DNA from: Paraphysomonas bandaiensis
Lineage: Eukaryota; Protista; Chrysophyceae
Length of the DNA stretch: 64,000 bases
Direction: 5' to 3'
NCBI GenBank assembly: GCA_965644295.1
Contig: CBFFRP010000406.1
Location: forward strand, 372,001 to 436,000
Made by a program: the position numbers and the translations under genes. The notes beneath the pieces were generated by a model. That model was given only the letters and a program-made list of their open reading frames with translations, had not been told where the DNA came from and made no database searches. Below are positions 3,017 to 23,576 of this stretch, piece by piece (within the stretch, counting starts at the first letter, position 1; each line of letters begins with the position of its first letter).

Positions 3017-3705
3017 CGTTATAAGTTTTCGACACAACGACCGCAATCAGATATTCGCTGCCAATGAGAGAAGCCTCACACAGTACTGTCTACAGCAATC
3101 CTCTTAAGTGTGCTATTCAACGCCAGTGAGTTAGATATTATGCAATGTGTGGTGCAGTGAAACGACCGTCACTGCACCTGCACTTCCCTTGTAAAGTACG
3201 TGGACAAAAGATATCTTTGCCTCCTCCCTCGACCACCAATACCACACACTGCATTCCTGGTTCGAAGTTTTTATTGGCCCGCATGTTATCGTGTGATCCC
3301 ATGATGACCCTTCCCACAATCTACGATACACAACCACCAATACACACAGACCGGGTCTCGTATATTACGGACTACAGCAGTATCCTGTTCCAGAACTACA
3401 GAATTCTCCAGCACATGCATGGCCGACACTTTTACGCATGTGGATGATATGTGATAACTACGAGTCGTACAAAAGTGGTGTATTTTATTGAATGACTCCT
3501 CAAAATGTTAAGTTTCCCAACATATATGTAGAAACCCTCCTATTTTATGCTGTTTGGCAGGATATTTCCAACAACATCTGTTTCTATCACTCCAAACATC
3601 CGTAAGGTGGACTATGCTGGCTGTATCATACATACATCATCCTGCCTGTCGATCCTGCCACAGGCTCAATTCTGATTTCATTCTTGCTTGTGAATATCGT
3701 GCGCT

Positions 3706-4453
3706 ATGATTAGTGATAGTTTGCGCCATAGCATCGAATCACTCACTGATTTTGATCAGTCGAATATCCATAAGATATATGATGAAGTAGCGGGAGATTA
3801 TGATAACATGATGCAGTTCATGGGGAGCCCCGACCCCTCTCAGTGTGCTGATCTTGTCAAGAGATTGTTTCCTTCTAAAGAGGATGTTTCTATTTTGGAT
3901 ATGGTGCGTTTCACACTGATATGATGTTACACACTGACTCAGAGTGTCCCACCGAATCATTAATCACGTGTTATTGTAGGGGTGCGGTACAGGTTTAGTG
4001 GCAAGTGAGTTGCTGGCAAGAGGATTTTACCAGAGTCAGCTTGTAGGGCTTGACGCCAGTCGTGGCATGCTTGATGTAGCCAAATCCAAGTCTCTCTATA
4101 TGGAATATGTGCATACCTTTCTGGGGCGACCACAAAACTTCCCTCCCTTTTTGAAAGACCGTTTTGGCATTGTTATTGCCACCGGTATTCTAGAGGAAGG
4201 GCATCTGGGTCCAATTGTTTTTATGGAGATGTTAATGGCAACGAAGATAGGCGGGTACGTCATATTTACGACTCGAGAAGCGTACCTCGAGAAGTTGGGT
4301 TATATGGCCTCCATTAAAAACCTAGAAAAATCTAATGCGTGGATAAAAGTATCCGAGTCGTCATTCCGAAGATACTATAATATTGAGGAAGGCAGCGCGA
4401 TTGGAGGGTTTTGGCCTGTTGATGCGGTGATTTTGGCCTATCAGAAACTCTGA
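3706..4453 (+). CDS. Class I SAM-dependent methyltransferase, METTL27/WBSCR27-like; intron 3904-3979
   Basis: Splicing ATG|GTGCGT...TTGTAG|GGG restores motif I ILDMGCGTGL. It is followed by LVGLDASRGML and GGYVIFTTR, with N-terminal IYDEVAGDYD. Confidence 0.85.
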
Positions 4454-4834
4454 TGTTCTATTGTCTTCTGTAATCTATCCACTCTTTTATTATCTAGCGG
4501 TATTGCTATATTCTTTTAAGTTACATATATTACTAAATTCGATATATTACCTACACAATAACTAAAATTCTATACTTTACTTACACAGTTGCTGAAGTTG
4601 TTCCTGTCGATTAGTTCTGAAATTTCGATACCCGATATGTATTGAAAGTACCACTTAGAAGAAATAATACAGTTACGCAGCTAGTCATATAACAGTTTAG
4701 TTTATGACATTATAATCAATTCAGGATTAAAATTCCCATCCTTGTTTTCTTTTCTATGTTGAGTATTGCGATATTGAGCTATGAAAAGCTTTATTATAAA
4801 ATTTTTGAATTATGCATTATTTAAACGCAAAATA

Positions 4835-5900
4835 TTTGATGTAGTTGAGAAACCACCTGGTATTTGTCCAAAATAACATATACGTATTCAAAAAACGGGT
4901 CCTTAAAGAAACATACTGCTCGATTGGTTGAATTACGCTATTTTCAGCGATGAGACATAGATGTAGAGAGCACATTTGTTCCGGCAGTTAAGTTCATAGC
5001 TGTTGGTCTAATTATGTTAGCATTTATAGATTTACGGAGATGGGTACATCAAGGATTTTCAGTTGTCTTAAATTTCGTCGATCTCTCTATAGTCTTGGGA
5101 ATTTCCCACGATTAAAGTGGGATACTATACAAGAATTTATTAAATCGTGGTTAAAACTTGCGTATTAGAACCATGCTTATATTATCATGTCATTTATATC
5201 GATTGCCCAACTAGATAAATCTACCACTGCGTATGCAGAGAAGATTCTTATTAGACATGAGGAGTTCCTTGGTACAGCTAACAAGACTACAAAATCCCCT
5301 CTATCAACAGTTGCCTCGAAACGCATCAACTCATCTCCGGAGAGGAGCTTCCACGTGACGTACAAATGGGTGTACTGAAGTTTACTGGGTGCCATGTGGT
5401 ATCTATCCATGAATACACACCCTGACATTGCATATGCTGTGGGCTTGTTGTCTCGTCATGCTGCTACAGGAAAGTAACTTTGGTTGCATGCAAATTAATC
5501 ATTAATCTATTACATTTCAGTATGTCAGGGGGATGCTTAAGAGAAAAAAGGAATCCGATATTATGGATCCACGTTCGATATGTGTATCTTCACTGATGTG
5601 TATTGGGCTGGAGATGTTATGCCTCAACATCATCAATGCAGAGTTGGGGATGTTGGTCAAACTGGTATTTCGACGGTGCGAGCACACTACATTTCTTTGG
5701 ATAGCCAGGAAATCCGGTATTTCATACAATATGTTCGACACAACATATACTATTCGTACTTGAACATGTAACTCCGGATGGACTTTTCAACACGGCTATA
5801 CACTGTATCATGTTGGTACTAGTGACGAAACTGCTGATATTTTTACCAAACTTCGTCTTGTTTCGTTTATGATAAGTATCGAAAGAGGTGTCCAGCCAAA
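4835..5900 (+). pseudogene. Decayed Ty1/copia reverse transcriptase-RNase H remnant
   Basis: Frameshifted fragments FDVVEKPPG, TARLV, LKFRRSLYSL, AYAEKILIRH, SLLGAMWYLSMNTHPDIAYAVGLLSRH, FTDVYWAGDV and ETADIFTK are colinear with the intact element at 33.4-38.9 kb. Confidence 0.85.
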
Positions 5901-6463
5901 GATCAGGAAAGTTCTACAAGGTACACGATCAAAATACAACCTACTAAGTTCATTGCCTGCAGTGAGGCTAGATAAAGCCGTACCATACGTCCACCAGATC
6001 GTTCCTGGTGGTTTTTGTGGTTGCGTATTCGTCAGTCATGTCTCATGATGTAAACATTCTATTCACAGCTTTGAATTGAGCAGTTAATATCTGTGTCGTA
6101 CTCTATATTATATATATATATATGAGACAGTATTATATATATGAGATAGTCCTGACAAATTGACATATATCGACTGTATACTGTATAAGACCATAACCAC
6201 GTAACAGCAGGTAAGTAGTTGAGATTGAATAAGTGTAGCAAATGTCAATGAACGATAAGTAATATTGATTATTATTTTACCAACGAATAGTGATATAGAG
6301 CGGGTTCAACGTTCAGATATCGAAGTAAAATATACACTTTTAAATTTAGAGTGCTGTAACCAAAGTTACTTTTAGTTTAAAGTGAATATATAATACCACC
6401 GTACTGGGCATTCTCACAGTAATGCCATGAAAGTGTATAAAAACAAAAGTAAACCACAAATTC

Positions 6464-9400
6464 TTACTGACATCCACTGTGATTGTCCCAGTAGTCATAT
6501 AAACTTTGTACATCATCTTTGGCGCTATACTTCGTTGCAACAATTCTTTTCATTTCATCGACAAACCTACATAACGATATAAGTGTCAAGAGCCAATCAC
6601 CAAAGTTTAATAGTAGGTACTGTAATATACATAAAAATAACAAAACCTTGCAGATATCTATATATAAGTACGCACAAACAGCAGCAAGAAGTTGATTATA
6701 CCTTGCATAAATATGTTTTCCTCCCGCCCCATTGCCATGTACAAGCGATACACATCGGAGTTCGCTTTCCCATACTTTATTCGCCGTTTGTATAGCAAAA
6801 ACACCGCTCAAGCCATCGAAATCAGAGGAGCGCAGCCCTAGCGTACACAAAAATATGTCATTCGTGTAGTCGATGGACATGATGTGGGGGTTTTGAGCAG
6901 CAAACAAACTGAAGAGTTGCTGGTCATCCTCCACCATTTTTATCATAGAGTTAGACTCTCGGAAAGTATATTCATACAACTCCCGCATCTATACAAGCAA
7001 AGGCTACCCATTAATTTATATGCCCGAAAAAATATAAGAAAAGTGCATACTCTATAAAAATGATATCTACATACAAAAGCAATAGGAAAAACCTATGCTC
7101 ACATTCTTCATGACACCAAATAATGGCATATATATCAACGAACCATATATATCGGCTTCCAATTTCACGTGTTCTATTACGACTACGTTACCAAATAACC
7201 CCTCAATTTACTTACCTGTTGTACCCTCCCCACCACGCAACCACCATTCAAATATTTCGGATACATGTCACTTTGATAATAAGTACTCTTATTCACATTT
7301 GTCGAAGTAGTACGGAAATTGGCCCACCCAACTGCGACATTCAATGAATATACAACGCCATGCACGTATACATAAATGTACAAGCTGCAATACGTAGGCA
7401 TGAATAATGACAAGCAATAAAATTCTCTACATGTGATATGCAGTATTCAGCACAATACCTGTTTGGGTAGGATAAGCATTATTTTCAGCGCAGTGTATAA
7501 TGGGAGTCGGGGATTCTTCCAAGCGCTGTCACACCAAAAAGTATGATAACAGTTTGAGAAAAATTAGCCCCAACATACCTTTCCAATATGCCGAATTGCT
7601 GGCATCAGAAGAACATCGTAGGCATCAAATATCACGACAACATCACTGTCATCCATAAGTTTATTATTCCTGAGCTCTTCAAGATAATATTCCATCCGGT
7701 CAGTAGTTGAGCTGTACGGTCTACCAACTCCAACCACCTAGAAAAAAATATTCAAAATACAAAGAGATCAATAGTTAGATTCGAAATAGCAAGGTTCATT
7801 TTTACAACCCAGCTTATGTGTATGATGCTTTACCATAGTACTATATTCATGGATAGGACTTCCTAATGAATGCAAATCGGCATCATAGGTATATTGTACA
7901 TACTAGCAGCATGACATACAGAGGCAGAAATCATACCGATAAGTTTACGCCTGCTATCATCGCCGACATTTTCAATGCCATAACTCTATCATCAATATAA
8001 GTTGCGCACGTCAAAAGCCACACCTTATGGCGGGTTTGCACAGTGCCATCACTACGAATGTCGTGCAACACATTCAGGTTCCGTTTTTGTTCATCCCAAG
8101 TCTTTCGGTACGCCTGTACAGTAGAATATAACGGAGGCTCCAGACTATCTAGCAGCCATGTCACAGATTCTCTATAGAGACCTATTGCACATGCATACGT
8201 TAAAATCAATTATATGCAAAGTAAGAGTTACAAAAAAATATCTCATACAAAGAATACACTTGTTGTGTAAACAACGCTATGTATAGAACGATAAGTACTG
8301 CGTTCTACAATTCATTTAAATTGCATATATATACTGTTACAGTCAATTGTATATAATTATAAATATACGTATATAATGTAGACACCGTTCAACTTTACGA
8401 AATTATTCATCTGCCCAACCTAAATTGTGGTATATTTCACTCGTAACATGATAGATTAAATAGGGTTGGGTATATCTTGCTCGCGGTCGGTGCTCTGGGT
8501 CATTAAAATATGCATCCGCCAAGATGTATTGACTATATATCCAGTGCAATTTCTCCAACGTTTCTAGCGCAGTGAGCTTTTCATCAAGTGGAGTAATGCC
8601 ATCTGTTAGTGATAGTCTCCGAACAGTCTGTATAAAATGACCAGCCAAGAATTAGTATTGATGCACAGTATGGATAGCAAGAATACTACTCGTCGGACTT
8701 CTAATTAACAATACTCACTGTTGCAGCTGAGTGTCCTTAATTCCGCATATACACAAACCTACTTTCTACACTTACCGCACTGTAGAAAGAGTTAAAAAAT
8801 ATATCGCCTTGAAACCCTAAAAGGCCTAATACATATACGTGGGTGGAAAACAATGCATTTAAGTTTCCCGATAAGGAGAGCTCTCGGAGACAGTCAACAG
8901 TGGCCTGCATTGTACACCGTTTACAAAAGTTAACGAATATCTCTACGCTATGGTAATACGTATACAATCGCATTAAAGCACAATTCTTCAATAAATTTCA
9001 AATACACAAGTTTATAAAGACAGCATATCTCCTTCGGTCCAATTAAAACTGTTCATATCACTCGAAAAGATACATAAGCTTACCTCTGTCAGCTCCAGCG
9101 ATGAGAATTGCGTCTGGTTCATAACATTGAAATACTGATAACAACTCGTAGAAGAAGTCGTATACTGTCTATTTCGCGATGGTAATTGGTACAAATTCTG
9201 ACTAGAGCTTTTTCGCATATCAAACACATTCAGTGTCGTGTCTATCGCTATTACTGTTGGACAGGGGAAATCCGAAGGCAAGCAATACAATTGGCTCCTA
9301 GAAATATCGATGTATGACAGCAGACTGGATACTATTCCGACTTCAGATACCCCATATAAAGGGTGGGACAGAACTCTGTACAGCATAGTTTTTATTTCAT

Positions 9401-18661: not shown

Positions 18662-19241
18662 TTAATGTAAATGGAATTAATGACAAATGTCCCGGAAATT
18701 ATAATGGCATTACCATTAATGTCATTGCCATTAACGGTACCAGGCCCTGTTATTAGGTTGTTAGCATTTGTCTCTAGCAGGTAACTGACGCAATTTAACT
18801 GAAAAATATAGTATATATTGAAGCTATTATGTATGGAGAAGATATTGGGAATTGGTGGTTGCTGCTCTGCAACAACAATACAACGTCACTAATTTACTAT
18901 CTTTTCTAAGATATTTCAGCAAGTACCCAATCTTACAAAACTTAACTTAAATATCTTCCTTCGTTAGAATGATGACATCAATAATCCCAAGCGCATAATT
19001 ACTATGACAATAAACTGATAACATTTCTGCGCAAATCAATAGTTCCTACTACTATCTTAATACTTATGGCAGTATTGAATTCAAATAACAAGCCAACATA
19101 CTTGCTTGCTAAAAGTTTCTTTACTATAATAGCTCGTATAATCGCTCCAACAAGTCAGTATCATTACCTTCCGTATGTGGTACTTAGTATATCGCATAGT
19201 CGCAGAGTAACAATGGTGATGATAATGTATGTGCTGACTCC

Positions 19242-22200
19242 TTACACAAGGTTAATCTTAAATTTCGCTGGACCGGGTTTACCAGTTGACGATCCTTTGG
19301 AACTAGTTTTGGTACCCTTCCGCACCATGTCAATATTTTTCGAGAGGCGGTTGGAAGACATTGATGGAAGTGGAGCTACAATGGATGTGTAAACTTGATT
19401 AGCCAATGAAAGCGTCGCTTGGGAAGTTTCATAGGCTGAAGGGTCTCCGCCATCCACATCACATACCTACCAATGAAATTAAAAGACGCCGACACATATA
19501 TGCCAAAGATAGTGTACGTCGAAAATATACACACATGTTCATATATTTCTAATCTTATAGATATTATATCACTACGCCCGAACGTACCAAAGCCATTTTG
19601 CCACTGGTCGATAAGCACGGTTGCAATACATATGTCAATTTGGTATTACGGTACGGAATATGAGCTTGTCGTTTGCTGATAGCATTGAAAATGTCCAAAA
19701 AACACTGCAGGCTTCTAGATTGCGAGATTTTTTCCACACCACCCAAGTGCCCCAAAGTAAAGTGACCAGAAACGTTTTCGGAACCCCTTGTGCCTGTGAT
19801 GTGAAGAGCAAAAAGGAAATGCGCAACGGATTCAGAACTCTGAGAAGTAAAACCATTGCGGACTTGGCTTGCTATCGCGGATATCTAAAAAATAAAATAA
19901 GAGCAAACCAATCTTTATACGTATATTTCAATTGTAAACTATAGTGTCGATGAATGCGTGTGCGTATCCCAATGTAATGATTTCAACCTGTTCATTATCT
20001 CGAAGATTTAAGGTAATTTTGGTAATATTGGTGATCGACACACTACCATCTGCATTCTTCTTAATCTCGTGTGCACTATCGTTCCCCATATTTCCACCAA
20101 ACATGTCCTATAATTCAGAAATCTTAAAAATCGTGTCTAGTACATTTATTCCCTTCGCATTGGCATGTCACACTAGAGGTGTACACGCTATGTACTTTTC
20201 ATTCGTACTACCATAAACATCTACATATATACCTGAATTACTTCTTCGTGTATCCTAATAAAACTCACATGGGCTTCATACATTGCCCCGCTGTCGACAC
20301 TTCGCAGTTTACCTACACAGAACAGCAGGATAAGGACAATACGCAACCAATCATGTTAACATATCAACTAGAGACTGAAAATATTGAATCTTCATATCCA
20401 AAATGGTTTTGAATATATTGGGAAGAGCATGTATACATATACAATACTACTACATTGTACATGCGCAGCTCACCAATTGCAGTGTCCAGTAATATGTATA
20501 GCAACCCGGAGTCAGGGCTCTTAGAAGTTCCAAATATTATGTCTGCGCGCTTAGAGCTGGTCTGTTCATTCCATTAGTAAGGGTTTCTATTATTTTTTAC
20601 ATAGCTCGTTTGTAGTATTAAGCATGACAAAGAACTCACCTGGCCACATGAGAGCACAGCCGCATGATGACCAGAAATTGAATGATCGAGGCACTCATCC
20701 AATGATACGGCAAGTTGAGACGGTAAGTCTAACTCATTCGCATTCAACACCTGTCAAAGAGATATGTTAAACTACATATAAAATTCGAATATGCACGAAT
20801 AATATATATACACTATCATGTGTATTGCAGTTCATACATAGTATTAAGAAAGTGCAATGTACACCTTATCATATATAAACTTATGCACAGCTTGTTCCGA
20901 TGCTCCATTAGTAGCCTCGCCTGTATCTATACTTCCACTAGCAGTTACTTTGAGAGACATACCATCACTCAATAGCTTCATAAAGGGAATAGCTTCAGAA
21001 GTGCGCGATGACTTCGATACCGCAGCATCTGTGTAACCAGAAATGAAATCAGAAACAAACACATAGTAGACTATACTGAAGTATAATATTCCGATGTTAT
21101 ATTAACAGTATAGTGAGTCAAAGCTGCTACAATATTCGAATAGGCAACATATTGCAGTGCGTAAGTCATTCAAATAGGCACCATACATACCTCTGACACA
21201 AACATACACCCTTATCCAGTACATAGCATTTCCTCGCGCCTCGTTGAGGGATATTTGCGCCTTTCTGGTCTCCGCTTGCCATTCCACAATAGTATTTTCT
21301 AACTCCCACAATGCTGACTTTGGTGTGCTTGCTGATGCGGTAGCCATTCGTCCAGAGCGGTATTCATCGAGTTGCTTCTCTAACTTCGATTTCTCAACGA
21401 CCACTTCCTCAAGTTGCCTTCTAGAAAGCTCCATCTCTTCTTCAACCTATATAATGAGCTGAATTAGCATGCAAAAGTAGAAGCCACAGAGTATAACCAC
21501 TGTACTACGCACCTGTTCCGACAGTTTGTTCCACTCCGCTTCAGCGGCAAGTCTATTTTGCTGCTCCTGTCGTGCTCTTTCCTCAGCCTCTTTTCTCAAA
21601 CTTTTCTCCACTACATATATAATGGATCAATATTTTCATTGGTATATGCAGAATCACACACGAGCGATAATTTTTTTCCTCACCTTCATCTCCACTTTTT
21701 TCGTCTAACAACTTCCTCAACATCTCAATTTCCTTACTTTGTCTGGATAACTGCTCATTCTTCCGATGTATTTCATCGTATAATCCCTGCATCACTTTTT
21801 CCATTGCTTGGATGTCGTTGGAAGAACCAGGGGCTAAGTTGACATCATGTGTAGAGCCGCTTTGCTCCAGACGACTTTTTAAGTTGGAGTTTTCAGCTTT
21901 CAAATCTTTGAGCTTTTTCCTCGTCTCACTACAAGAAAAGCGTTTAGAATACGAATACAGTACCACAGAGTTTATCATGGAGTGCACATCAATATGTTAT
22001 ATTCCACAAAACTATGGCAGTACCTCAACTCTTCCCACAGAGAGTTCGTTCTCTTCGCATCCATGTTCATCTGCGCCAGTTCTTCTCCTGACCCTCCGAG
22101 CATACTACTTAGCTCCTTCAATTCCAACGCCTGCTCCTGCATAAGTACACGAAAACAAGAGTAATCAAACAATGGTAAGTGCAGTCCATATGAGGGATTA

Positions 22201-23037
22201 TAAATTTTATAGACAAGACATGAACAATGGTAAGTCAACATTAGTTTTATCCACGCTAGTGATCCCAGTTGCACATTTGCTACCTGTATCTTCTTTTCTT
22301 TGGCTTCTACTTCAGCTTTGAAGGCTCTCCGCTCCTTGTCTTTGGCAGCCAATCTCAGTTTCATAACCCTAAATATAAAGCGGTTACATTAAAATAACAT
22401 TTCTTGAATCAATAGATCTATCTTACTTCAGATCATCCTCTAACTTATCAGCACGCGAAGACGAGTCCTCTAAATGAGCCGACTTCTGCTGTAATTGGAA
22501 CAAAATATTCATACTTTGCTGTAGCTCTTGAGATGCCGTTATTGTGGCATCCTTGTAGCGCTCTTCGATCAAGACACATTTCTCCCGCAAAGTGATAATT
22601 TCTTCCGACTGTGTTTTGAGAACAGTCTTCAGCTCCTGAATCAAAGGGTTCTGATTGCTAGTATCAGCTAGATTACGCTGCGAAGCCATACTGCTTGAAG
22701 CAGTGGCACTCGAACTACCCAGAATCTTTTGTATATCATCCTGAGAATATGAAAAATGGTTCTCAAACAAATCGTCGAGTTTATTGTAACCGGATTTCAA
22801 ATTTCGCGCAGATGAAGCACTCGGCAAATGTCTATTCGAAGTTGCCAAGTGTCGAGGAGAGCTCCTTCGAGGGGAGGCCGACCGAGTTAATGAATTCGAG
22901 CTACGCCCTACACTGGTTAAATTATTCGTCGACCGACTAAACAACGATGATCGGGAATTGCGGGTTTTAGACATGGCAGAAGGGGGGTCCTGCAGCATCT
23001 CTTGCTCCACCTGAAGCTTTCGCATGTTGCTTGCCAT
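19242..23037 (-). CDS. Kinesin-14-like protein (N-terminal tail, coiled coil, C-terminal motor-homology domain) with degenerate ATP-binding motifs; more than 10 exons
   Basis: Neck LNEARGNAMYWIR (cf. LxELKGNIRVFCR), FIYDK|V, GHHAAVLSCGQ|TSSKRAD, VSFIRIHEEVIQ|DMF, HEIKKNADGSVSITNIT, HIPYRNTKLTYVLQPCLSTSGK and ETSQATLSLANQV, all in kinesin order. Confidence 0.85.
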
Positions 23038-23576
23038 AACTAATAATTAAATTACAAATATAACCCCATTATAATAGATATCTAAAACATATTGTCTTAA
23101 CAGCACTCAGATGACCATATATTAATAAAGCTACATGGTAGCATCATTAATTCCGGTCATTGATTTACCGCAAGCAGCCTCACAGTATAACTCTCGTCAG
23201 AATCTTATCATTAAAAGCTGCACTCCGGCTGCTGTATATGCATATATCGACGTACAAAAATCAAGAAAAAAAATCAACACTCTGAGACAAAATGAGAAGA
23301 GGGGATCCAGTCTCCCACTTCAAATAGGCCTTCACCACTGGGGTATCTTGTGAGGCCAGTTTTGGCAAACTGAATTTTTTGCGAAACTGCTTTGTTTTAT
23401 ATAAGATTTCAGCAAGTAACACGAACGCACAGTTGCGGCGTGGTAGCTCTAAGATTATATACTGACAGGCAGTGTCCAAACTTGTGGTATAAACCAAAGC
23501 TAGATAGTGTATGCATGCTCAGCTCATTATAACGCCTGTTTATTAAATATTGCGATTTGGTCTGCCATAAACTGAC

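What the first reader, a model, noticed from the sequence alone, without database searches (positions are those of the whole stretch)
19242..21250. Candidate catalytically dead kinesin-14 (Vik1/Cik1-like pseudo-motor) outside yeasts
The neck, core strands and microtubule-binding L12/alpha5 segment (HIPYRNTKLTYVLQPCL) are retained in an intact, in-phase spliced gene. All three nucleotide motifs are eroded: P-loop GQTGSGKT reads GQ|TSSKRA (intron 20562-20639), switch I NxxSSRSH reads TSQSSESVAH, and switch II DLAGSE reads HLGGVE. The RxRP motif is also missing. In budding yeast such non-catalytic motor-homology subunits heterodimerise with Kar3. An independent protist version could be a regulatory partner or a static microtubule cross-linker.
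Basis: partly seen in the sequence, partly recalled or inferred. Interest (0 to 1): 0.72.

Follow-up and report, generated by a model that had tools for sequence, protein, structure and literature searches.

The report
Dead kinesin-14 motor in a chrysophyte
This marine protist makes a spliced, conserved protein built like a minus-end kinesin-14 motor whose ATP-binding motifs have all been lost, an origin of a "dead motor" subunit separate from the yeast Vik1/Cik1 and trypanosome KIN-B cases.

Summary
On the minus strand, 23037-19242, lies a 13-exon gene for an 830-aa protein. Its parts are a basic Ser-rich tail, about 300 aa of coiled coil, a kinesin-14 neck and a C-terminal kinesin motor domain. 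Intron-less contigs in four runs, one a marine polyA metatranscriptome, confirm all 12 introns, including the one inside the P-loop. The mRNA reads GQTSSKRA for GQTGSGKT, SESVAH for SSRSH, HLGGVE for DLAGSE and CVRD for RxRP. It keeps L12/alpha5 (HIPYRNTKLTY). It has also lost 14 residues of L11/alpha4.

The gene is not decaying. Relatives with the same losses form two clades, with conserved family-specific replacements and a conserved stalk. Population dN/dS in one clade is about 0.1-0.2.

A maximum-likelihood tree places the family, on a long stem, inside the kinesin-14 clade (100/100). It sits next to the genome's own intact kinesin-14 on contig C352.

So this is a kinesin-14-derived pseudo-motor, and I found no published description of the family. 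Pairing with a catalytic kinesin-14, as Vik1/Cik1 do, is plausible but untested: the one complex prediction gave no verdict.

The parts
19242..23037 (-). Whole coding region of the pseudo-kinesin gene: 13 exons, 830 codons plus stop. It is identical to database protein P0151 (MMETSP1103, Paraphysomonas transcript).
   Evidence: Exon model. All 12 introns are GT-AG, and each is skipped in intron-less contigs of runs X1, X2 and X5 (seven of them also in X9), with no mismatches. An in-frame stop lies just upstream of the ATG.
22427..23037 (-). Exon 1 (aa 1-204). It holds the basic Ser/Thr-rich N-terminal tail (aa 1-135, pI 10.6, one SPRR site) and the start of the coiled-coil stalk.
   Evidence: A conserved stalk block starts at about aa 165 and aligns with residues 1-135 of clade-B protein P0014.
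21513..22368 (-). Exons 2-5 (22368-22284, 22136-22024, 21928-21684, 21610-21513): coiled-coil stalk, aa 204-384. It includes the family-invariant Trp378.
21191..21446 (-). Exon 6 (aa 385-470): distal stalk, a short break, the kinesin-14 neck helix (aa 430-457, 21311-21228), the neck-motor junction with a family-specific 4-residue insertion, strand beta1, and CVR(D) in place of the RxRP adenine motif.
   Evidence: Alignment with 65 canonical kinesin-14 motors. hhalign of the stalk/neck profile against the stalk of the genome's catalytic kinesin-14: probability 93.9%, E 1.6e-7.
20865..21028 (-). Exon 7 (aa 470-524): the N-terminal lobe of the motor, up to the FxFD-type strand (KFIYDK).
20544..20645 (-). 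Degenerate P-loop GQ|TSSKRA (aa 560-567), split by intron 20562-20639. Against GQTGSGKT the changes are G4S, G6K, K7R and T8A.
   Evidence: The RNA joint 20561 to 20640 is seen in X1, X2 and X5. Column-by-column comparison.
20233..20312 (-). Exon 10 (aa 591-617). The beta4 strand reads FIRIHEE in place of canonical EIYNE. Arg at the E position is invariant in all six family members.
19988..20107 (-). Exon 11 (aa 618-657): the beta5/L8 region (HEIKKNADGSVSITN). It is strongly conserved within the family and is a microtubule-facing element in kinesins.
   Evidence: Family invariants H, DGS and TN. The donor at 19988 is set by RNA.
19588..19884 (-). Exon 12 (aa 658-756). It holds degenerate switch I (19848-19819), degenerate switch II (19755-19729), a 14-residue deletion of L11 and the alpha4 N-terminus, the alpha4 remnant (19719-19672), and intact L12/alpha5 (19662-19612).
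   Evidence: It is the only exon that hits Pfam Kinesin on its own (E 3.9e-9). The Kar3 alignment shows the 14-residue gap.
19242..19466 (-). Exon 13 (aa 757-830 plus stop): the last strand and helix alpha6 of the motor, then a basic Lys-rich C-terminal tail (aa 791-830, pI 11.3). The tail's end, KFKINLV, is echoed by KMKLNLL in orthologue P0152.

Best explanation
The gene encodes a non-catalytic paralogue of kinesin-14: a pseudo-motor.

Shown:
- It is transcribed and spliced.
- It descends from the kinesin-14 lineage that also gave the genome's intact kinesin-14 on contig C352.
- It has lost the Walker-A lysine and threonine, the switch I arginine and serines, the switch II aspartate and the RxRP motif.
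- It belongs to a conserved family under purifying selection.

Inferred:
- The head cannot bind or hydrolyse Mg-ATP the way kinesins do, so any microtubule contact it makes is not gated by nucleotide. That contact would run through the conserved L8, the alpha4 remnant, L12/alpha5 and the basic C-terminal tail.
- The conserved neck and stalk make it a dimer.
- My preferred mechanism, at about 0.4 on its own terms, is that it pairs through neck and stalk with the catalytic kinesin-14. It would then act as the second, passive head that tethers or positions the active one, as Vik1 and Cik1 do for Kar3.

The confidence given here (0.8) is for the core claim (a conserved, expressed, non-catalytic kinesin-14 derivative), not for the choice of partner.
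For: - Expression and splicing: intron-less contigs in X1, X2, X5 (a polyA marine metatranscriptome) and X9, with no mismatches. The join equals P0151.
- Kinesin fold and ancestry: PF00225 at 78 bits. The best solved relatives by sequence are Kar3, E 5e-17. The AF2 model has pLDDT 89.6 and matches kinesin motor domains at Z 32-34 and TM 0.7-0.75.
- Tree: the family is monophyletic (100/100). It lies inside the kinesin-14 side of a 100/100 split against 27 other kinesins (26 of this genome and Chlamydomonas P0171), in a 96/80 subclade with C352.
- Motif loss: only 42 of the 96 columns that are at least 90% conserved in 65 kinesin-14 motors are kept; canonical rows keep a median of 94. All 31 other kinesin loci checked in this genome keep DLAGSE and 29 keep SSRSH; every P-loop that was recovered (19) is GxxxxGKT.
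- Constraint: orthologues P0152, P0014, P0013, P0005 and P0168 share the losses, family-specific invariant replacements and a conserved stalk. dN/dS is 0.09-0.21 among five population variants of the clade-B gene.
- Partner idea: neck and proximal stalk are still homologous to those of C352. Clade-B proteins lack the basic N-terminal tail, so a homodimer would have no second kind of microtubule site. Published precedents are Kar3-Cik1/Vik1 (PMC4338441) and KIN-A:KIN-B (PMC10987093).
Against: - There is no biochemical evidence of any kind.
- Microtubule binding by the head is not assured. L11 and the first half of alpha4 are deleted in this lineage. In trypanosome KIN-B, loss of alpha4-L12 residues goes with failure of the motor domain to reach the spindle (PMC10987093).
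- Heterodimerisation is unsupported by any test here. The stalks differ in length, about 320 aa against about 500 aa.
- The dN/dS values rest on 3-12 synonymous differences per pair, and on clade B rather than on this gene.
- Clade-B members keep NKT in the P-loop and ELAG in switch II, so residual nucleotide binding in the family's ancestor, or in that clade, cannot be excluded.
Confidence: 0.8

Rival explanations
1. It is a homodimeric, non-motile microtubule-associated protein. Two dead heads plus basic N- and C-terminal tails would bundle, cross-link or brake microtubules without any catalytic partner, for example in the spindle or the flagellar roots.
For: The neck and stalk are kept. The N-tail is basic (pI 10.6) and so is the C-tail (pI 11.3). 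L8 and L12/alpha5 are conserved. From general knowledge, kinesin heads that cannot bind nucleotide behave like rigor mutants and hold microtubules tightly.
Against: Clade-B orthologues start directly at the conserved stalk block and have no basic N-tail. A tail-plus-head cross-linker therefore cannot be the conserved function of the family. The stalk is conserved beyond a heptad pattern, including an invariant Trp, which suggests a specific partner. No test of self-association was run.
Confidence: 0.3
2. It is still an enzyme. The head binds and hydrolyses nucleotide with a non-canonical pocket, for example with Arg566 standing in for the Walker lysine, and it moves or depolymerises microtubules.
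For: The P-loop has the canonical length and keeps G-Q-T, with a basic residue at the lysine position. The switch II Gly and Glu are kept. Clade-B relatives keep N-K-T and E-L-A-G.
Against: Four motifs are hit at once in this gene: G6K, K7R and T8A in the P-loop, the Arg and Ser of switch I, D to H in switch II, and RxRP to CVRD. The L11/alpha4 element that couples microtubule binding to the ATPase is deleted. From general knowledge, single changes at several of these positions already abolish kinesin ATPase.
Confidence: 0.07
3. It is a decaying or non-functional duplicate that happens still to be transcribed.
For: The family sits on a long stem of 1.46 changes per site, and more than half of the conserved kinesin-14 positions are lost.
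Against: The 830-codon frame is intact across 13 exons and all splice sites are used. Orthologues in two clades, 31-43% identical, keep the frame, the fold elements and family-specific invariant residues. dN/dS is 0.09-0.21 in clade B. The gene is single-copy in the genome.
Confidence: 0.03
4. It is a scaffold that no longer touches microtubules. The kinesin fold would be reused as a protein-protein interaction module, as proposed for trypanosome KIN-B, and the stalk would bind cargo.
For: L11 and alpha4 are truncated. The motor domain is acidic overall, pI 6.05. The KIN-B precedent is in PMC10987093.
Against: The best-conserved block of the whole family is exactly the alpha4 remnant plus L12/alpha5 (RSLQC...ISKRQxHIPYRNxKxTYxLQP), together with L8. 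From general knowledge of kinesin-tubulin structures, these are the tubulin-facing elements.
Confidence: 0.15

Closest known systems
Vik1 and Cik1 of budding yeasts, the non-catalytic partners of the kinesin-14 Kar3
   Same: The domain order is coiled coil followed by a C-terminal kinesin-fold domain with no working nucleotide site. The likely origin is a kinesin-14. They are published as a passive second head that binds microtubules (PMC4338441, PMC3384419).
   Different: The protist protein is still a kinesin by sequence: Pfam 78 bits, and Kar3 as the best solved relative. No Vik1 or Cik1 chain appeared among the rows shown: the best 60 by sequence and the best 50 in each fold list. It arose separately, inside a stramenopile kinesin-14 lineage. 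Heterodimerisation is unproven here.
KIN-B of Trypanosoma brucei, the inactive partner of KIN-A in the chromosomal passenger complex
   Same: [quoted passage not shown] It forms a parallel coiled-coil heterodimer with an active kinesin, in a protist (PMC10987093).
   Different: KIN-B has an N-terminal motor of an orphan family. It has also lost many alpha4-L12 residues, and its motor domain does not go to the spindle. The chrysophyte protein is a C-terminal, kinesin-14-type motor that keeps L12/alpha5.
Catalytic kinesin-14 motors (Kar3, Ncd, KIFC1; in this genome the gene on contig C352)
   Same: They share the tail-stalk-neck-C-terminal motor plan and a homologous neck (RELE...RK.H.L.QEL[KR]G). 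The family is placed inside their clade.
   Different: All four nucleotide motifs are lost. Four residues are inserted between the neck glycine and beta1, and 14 residues of L11/alpha4 are deleted. Motor identity is only 24-28%, and 42 of 96 conserved positions are kept.

Membership tests
Kinesin superfamily (Pfam PF00225 motor domain) | A significant match to the motor-domain profile over most of its length | tested here: met
   P0151 scores 78.1 bits, E 8e-22, over residues 505-781 and profile positions 28-324 of 327; the cut-off is 29.3. The AF2 model matches kinesin motors at Z 32-34.
Kinesin superfamily (as an ATPase) | Walker A P-loop GxxxxGK[ST], switch I SSRSH, switch II DxxGxE and the RxRP adenine motif | tested here: not met
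   The gene reads GQTSSKRA, SESVAH, HLGGVE and CVRD. This is fixed in the mRNA, and no hidden exon could restore the motifs.
Kinesin-14 | C-terminal motor preceded directly by a coiled-coil neck with the conserved junction (..ELKGNIRV..) | tested here: met
   The motor lies at aa 456-790 of 830. The neck, aa 430-457, ends in ..EARGN, followed by a 4-residue insertion before IRV. Neck and stalk are homologous to those of the C352 kinesin-14: hhalign probability 93.9%.
Kinesin-14 | Phylogenetic placement inside the kinesin-14 clade | tested here: met
   Tree made with IQ-TREE, model LG+C20+F+G4, 53 rows. The split of kinesin-14 plus the pseudo family against 27 other kinesins (26 of this genome and Chlamydomonas P0171) has support 100/100, and the subclade with C352 has 96/80. 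Caveats: the stem is long, and the reference kinesin-14 rows were picked from the query's own best hits.
Kinesin-14 | Minus-end-directed, ATP-driven motility | not testable with these tools
   This needs a motility assay. The sequence argues against any ATP-driven activity.
Vik1/Cik1 type of non-catalytic subunit | Kinesin-fold domain without a nucleotide-binding site, at the C-terminal end of a coiled coil | tested here: met
Vik1/Cik1 type of non-catalytic subunit | Heterodimer with a catalytic kinesin-14 through the coiled coil | tested here: inconclusive
   The one complex prediction (C352 stalk/neck with P0151 residues 320-472) ended with no verdict. Only homology of the necks is shown.
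Vik1/Cik1 type of non-catalytic subunit | Common descent with yeast Vik1/Cik1 | tested here: inconclusive
   No Vik1 or Cik1 chain is among the 60 sequence rows or the 50 fold rows shown, and the lists are cut there. The tree puts the origin inside a protist kinesin-14 lineage, which favours an independent origin.

The most novel reading that the evidence does not exclude
Stramenopile protists evolved their own Vik1/Cik1-style system: a dead kinesin-14 head that pairs with the catalytic kinesin-14. Unlike the yeast case, sequence-traceable stages of 'motor death' survive. Clade B still has NKT and ELAG and a full-length L11. Clade A, which includes this gene, has lost the Walker lysine and threonine and the switch II aspartate, and has deleted L11 and half of alpha4. 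This would show step by step how a motor head becomes a passive microtubule-binding subunit.
Probability: 0.35. Interest if true: 0.75.

Novelty: new variant of a known kind. Interest (0 to 1): 0.58.

Why it matters
Non-catalytic kinesin heads are known from two places only: budding-yeast Vik1/Cik1 and trypanosome KIN-B. In yeast the sequence trail back to a motor has been erased.

Here a third, independent case is still alignable with its catalytic parent. It exists in two clades at different stages of loss, and it is expressed in the sea. That gives kinesin mechanists a natural series for three questions:
- Which elements a passive head must keep. Here these are L8, the end of alpha4, L12/alpha5 and the neck.
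- Which elements it can lose. Here these are motifs N1-N4 and L11.
- Whether pairing one live head with one dead head is a recurrent solution for kinesin-14.

It also flags an unannotated family. Its members carry only automatic labels such as 'kinesin family protein C1' or 'hypothetical protein', and those labels would mislead functional inference in protist transcriptomes.

Tried and rejected
- Exon-by-exon Pfam: only exon 12 scores on its own. The whole-protein result came from database protein P0151, not from a hand-joined model.
- My first donor for intron 11 (19940, GTTTAC) was wrong. RNA uses 19988.
- Word-index protein searches found few relatives: the query alone, then seven hits. The exhaustive HMMER search with exon 12 was what found the family.
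- The metagenome-contig scan with the family alignment gave only three weak loci.
- The Atlas look-up returned generic kinesin clusters.
- The attempt to name the organism of clade B through its TFIIH-p62-like neighbour returned only unnamed environmental proteins. The taxon stays unknown.
- Complex prediction of the C352 stalk/neck with P0151 residues 320-472 gave no verdict. It is evidence neither way.
- Fold searches cannot tell kinesin families apart: Eg5, KIF15, KCBP, Ncd and Kar3 are all tied.
- The neighbouring genes in the window give no functional hint.
- A pseudogene reading was rejected (see rival explanations).
- Alternative splicing that would restore the motifs was rejected.
I re-ran the same step with residue numbers only.
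Full report
**Observation**

The minus strand between 23037 and 19242 carries one gene. Six-frame reading and splice-site inspection gave 13 in-phase exons with GT-AG introns. Public runs were laid on 19200-23100. Single intron-less contigs of 2930 nt (X1), 2957 nt (X2) and 2243 nt (X5, a polyA marine metatranscriptome) match the window without a mismatch; shorter contigs of X9 do the same. Together they skip all 12 introns.

One of my donors was wrong: exon 11 ends at 19988, not 19940.

The RNA-confirmed join translates letter for letter to database protein P0151 (830 aa). P0001 is the same protein from Met5. P0001's source name gives MMETSP1103, TAXON_ID 36769, which is the chrysophyte genus Paraphysomonas.

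Exons were searched by reference, and all whole-protein work used P0151 or P0001, which the searches themselves returned. The join was made only inside local scripts, from window coordinates, to check identity.

**What the protein looks like**

- aa 1-135: a basic Ser/Thr-rich tail, pI 10.6.
- aa 136-429: coiled-coil stalk.
- aa 430-457: neck helix.
- aa 456-790: kinesin motor domain.
- aa 791-830: a basic Lys-rich tail, pI 11.3.

Pfam finds PF00225 at 78 bits, over residues 505-781. Among the separate exons, only exon 12 scores. The best solved relatives by sequence are Kar3 motor domains, E 5e-17. A Chlamydomonas axonemal kinesin-like protein, Ncd, KIFC3, KCBP and KIFC1 come next, and kinesin-1 scores lower.

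An AlphaFold2 model built on a 71-sequence alignment is confident: pLDDT 89.6, pTM 0.89. It superposes on many catalytic kinesin motors at TM 0.7-0.75 and Z 32-34. The fold is therefore kinesin, but fold alone does not pick a family.

**The motifs**

I aligned the protein with 65 canonical kinesin-14 motors taken from the exhaustive search.

| Element | Canonical kinesin-14 | This gene |
|---|---|---|
| P-loop | GQTGSGKT | GQTSSKRA |
| Switch I | SSRSH | SESVAH |
| Switch II | DLAGSE | HLGGVE |
| Adenine motif | RVRP | CVRD |
| beta4 | EIYNE | IRIHEE |
| L12/alpha5 | HvPyRNSKLTyLlqp | HIPYRNTKLTYVLQP |

Other changes:
- Four residues are inserted between the neck glycine and beta1.
- 14 residues of L11 and the N-terminal half of alpha4 are missing. 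This is also seen in the HMMER alignment with Kar3.
- The end of alpha4 (SRSLQCFLDIF) and the L8 region are kept.

Of the 96 columns that are at least 90% conserved in the canonical set, this protein keeps 42. Canonical rows keep a median of 94 and a minimum of 51.

The 31 highest-scoring other kinesin loci of the same genome all keep DLAGSE, and 29 of them keep SSRSH. Every P-loop that was recovered (19 loci) is GxxxxGKT. No frame of the gene region hides canonical motifs.

**Not a decaying gene**

An exhaustive HMMER search of 1.84 billion representatives with exon 12 returned the gene's own product first. Next came a small set of proteins that share the degenerate motifs, ahead of hundreds of canonical C-terminal-motor kinesins.

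Cluster members and a profile search brought the set to the following:
- P0152: 610 aa, from another MMETSP culture.
- P0014 and its 15 near-identical relatives: 760 aa.
- P0013, P0005 and P0168.
- Fragments P0002-P0004, P0011 and P0153.

They fall into two clades.
- Clade A comprises this gene and P0152, and by their motifs also the fragments P0003 and P0004. It has the short L11 and H or V at the switch II aspartate position.
- Clade B (P0014, P0013, P0005, P0168, P0011) keeps a long L11, N-K-T in the P-loop (GQTAGNKT in P0168) and ELAG in switch II. It has lost switch I and RxRP.

All six full-length motor sequences share invariant family-specific replacements. Examples are Arg at the E of EIYNE and Gln in the alpha4 SLS motif. 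They also share a block, RS.QC...ISKRQ.HIPYRN.K.TY.LQP, that is the best-conserved part of the family.

The stalk is conserved too. It has an invariant Trp, and an N-terminal stalk block is shared between P0151 (about aa 165-300) and P0014 (aa 1-135). Clade-B proteins have no basic N-terminal tail.

The clade-B gene is intronless on compact metagenome contigs. Five population variants give pairwise dN/dS of 0.09-0.21 for the nine pairs that differ in protein; L044 and L045 encode the same protein. These values rest on few differences.

In this genome the gene is single-copy.

**Ancestry**

I built a maximum-likelihood tree of 53 rows with IQ-TREE (model LG+C20+F+G4, ultrafast bootstrap and SH-aLRT). 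The rows were:
- the six family members;
- 18 randomly drawn canonical kinesin-14 hits;
- 28 kinesin motor domains of this genome, assembled from HMM hits;
- one Chlamydomonas kinesin.

The family comes out monophyletic (100/100) on a long stem of 1.46 changes per site. It lies on the kinesin-14 side of a 100/100 split against 27 other kinesins (26 of this genome and Chlamydomonas P0171). Within that side it sits in a 96/80 subclade that holds the genome's own kinesin-14 on contig C352.

The C352 gene has a basic tail, about 500 aa of coiled coil, the neck ELRGNVRVFARVRP, and intact GQTGSGKT, SSRSH and DLAGSE. It is also the best paralogue by direct search: 37% identity, E 1.4e-15. Its neck and proximal stalk align with the family's stalk profile at hhalign probability 93.9%.

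Two caveats apply. The stem is long. The reference kinesin-14 rows were chosen from the query's own best hits.

**Mechanism**

Shown: the protein is an expressed, conserved kinesin-14 derivative that lacks every residue class kinesins use to bind Mg-ATP and to sense the gamma-phosphate.

Inferred: it has no ATPase. Any microtubule binding is nucleotide-independent and runs through L8, the alpha4 remnant, L12/alpha5 and the basic C-tail. It dimerises through the neck and stalk.

I favour, at about 0.4, a heterodimer with the catalytic kinesin-14, as Kar3 forms with Vik1 or Cik1 (PMC4338441) and KIN-A with KIN-B (PMC10987093). The reasons are:
- the necks are still homologous;
- the stalk is conserved beyond heptads;
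- clade B lacks a tail that a homodimeric cross-linker would need.

A homodimeric static microtubule-associated protein (about 0.3) and a scaffold that no longer binds microtubules (about 0.15) remain open. The L11/alpha4 deletion makes head-microtubule binding uncertain.

The one complex prediction I could run gave no verdict and counts for nothing.

**Comparison and novelty**

The protein works, at most, like Vik1/Cik1. It is not their relative in any way I could detect, and it arose inside a protist kinesin-14 lineage.

Searches of the paper library found the yeast and trypanosome cases, but nothing on a stramenopile or chrysophyte pseudo-kinesin, and no paper combining Paraphysomonas, genome and kinesin.

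I rate it a new variant of a known kind. It is of real interest to kinesin specialists because the loss is sequence-traceable and staged across two clades, but it is functionally untested.

Noticed in passing
G000 contig C352, about 3200-6700, minus strand (locus L049): This is an intact catalytic kinesin-14 gene. It has a basic Ser-rich tail, about 500 aa of coiled coil, the neck ELRGNVRVFARVRP and canonical GQTGSGKT, SSRSH and DLAGSE. It is the closest paralogue of the pseudo-motor and the obvious candidate partner.
   Followed up: partly
L044:1344-3626, L045-L048 and L050:825-2177 (metagenome contigs): The clade-B pseudo-kinesin genes are intronless on compact contigs. In both L044 and L050 they keep the same downstream neighbour, a TFIIH-p62-like gene (PH_TFIIH/BSD). 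The organism could not be named: only unnamed environmental hits were found.
   Followed up: partly
Own-genome kinesin loci L004/L005, L016/L019, L025/L026 and L003/L012: These kinesin loci come as near-identical pairs on different contigs, with terminal branches of 0-0.1 in the tree. They are recent duplicates or uncollapsed haplotypes in the assembly.
   Followed up: no
G000 contigs C291:~127600-128600 and C373:~201300-202400 (L040, L028): Two very similar kinesins have a kinesin-14-like junction (..AKGNIQV.. then CRTRPP), intact nucleotide motifs and a coiled coil after the motor. They look like a second kinesin-14 type with an internal motor.
   Followed up: no
P0151 aa 456-462 (window 21233-21210) and the same place in all orthologues: A 4-residue insertion ending in an aromatic residue (AMYW, STYH, PSFS, PGFS) sits between the neck glycine and strand beta1. 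In Ncd this is the junction that sets the direction of movement. It is a hallmark of the family, and its effect is unknown.
   Followed up: no
If true, this protist has more than one pseudo-kinesin. I did not look at it.
   Followed up: no
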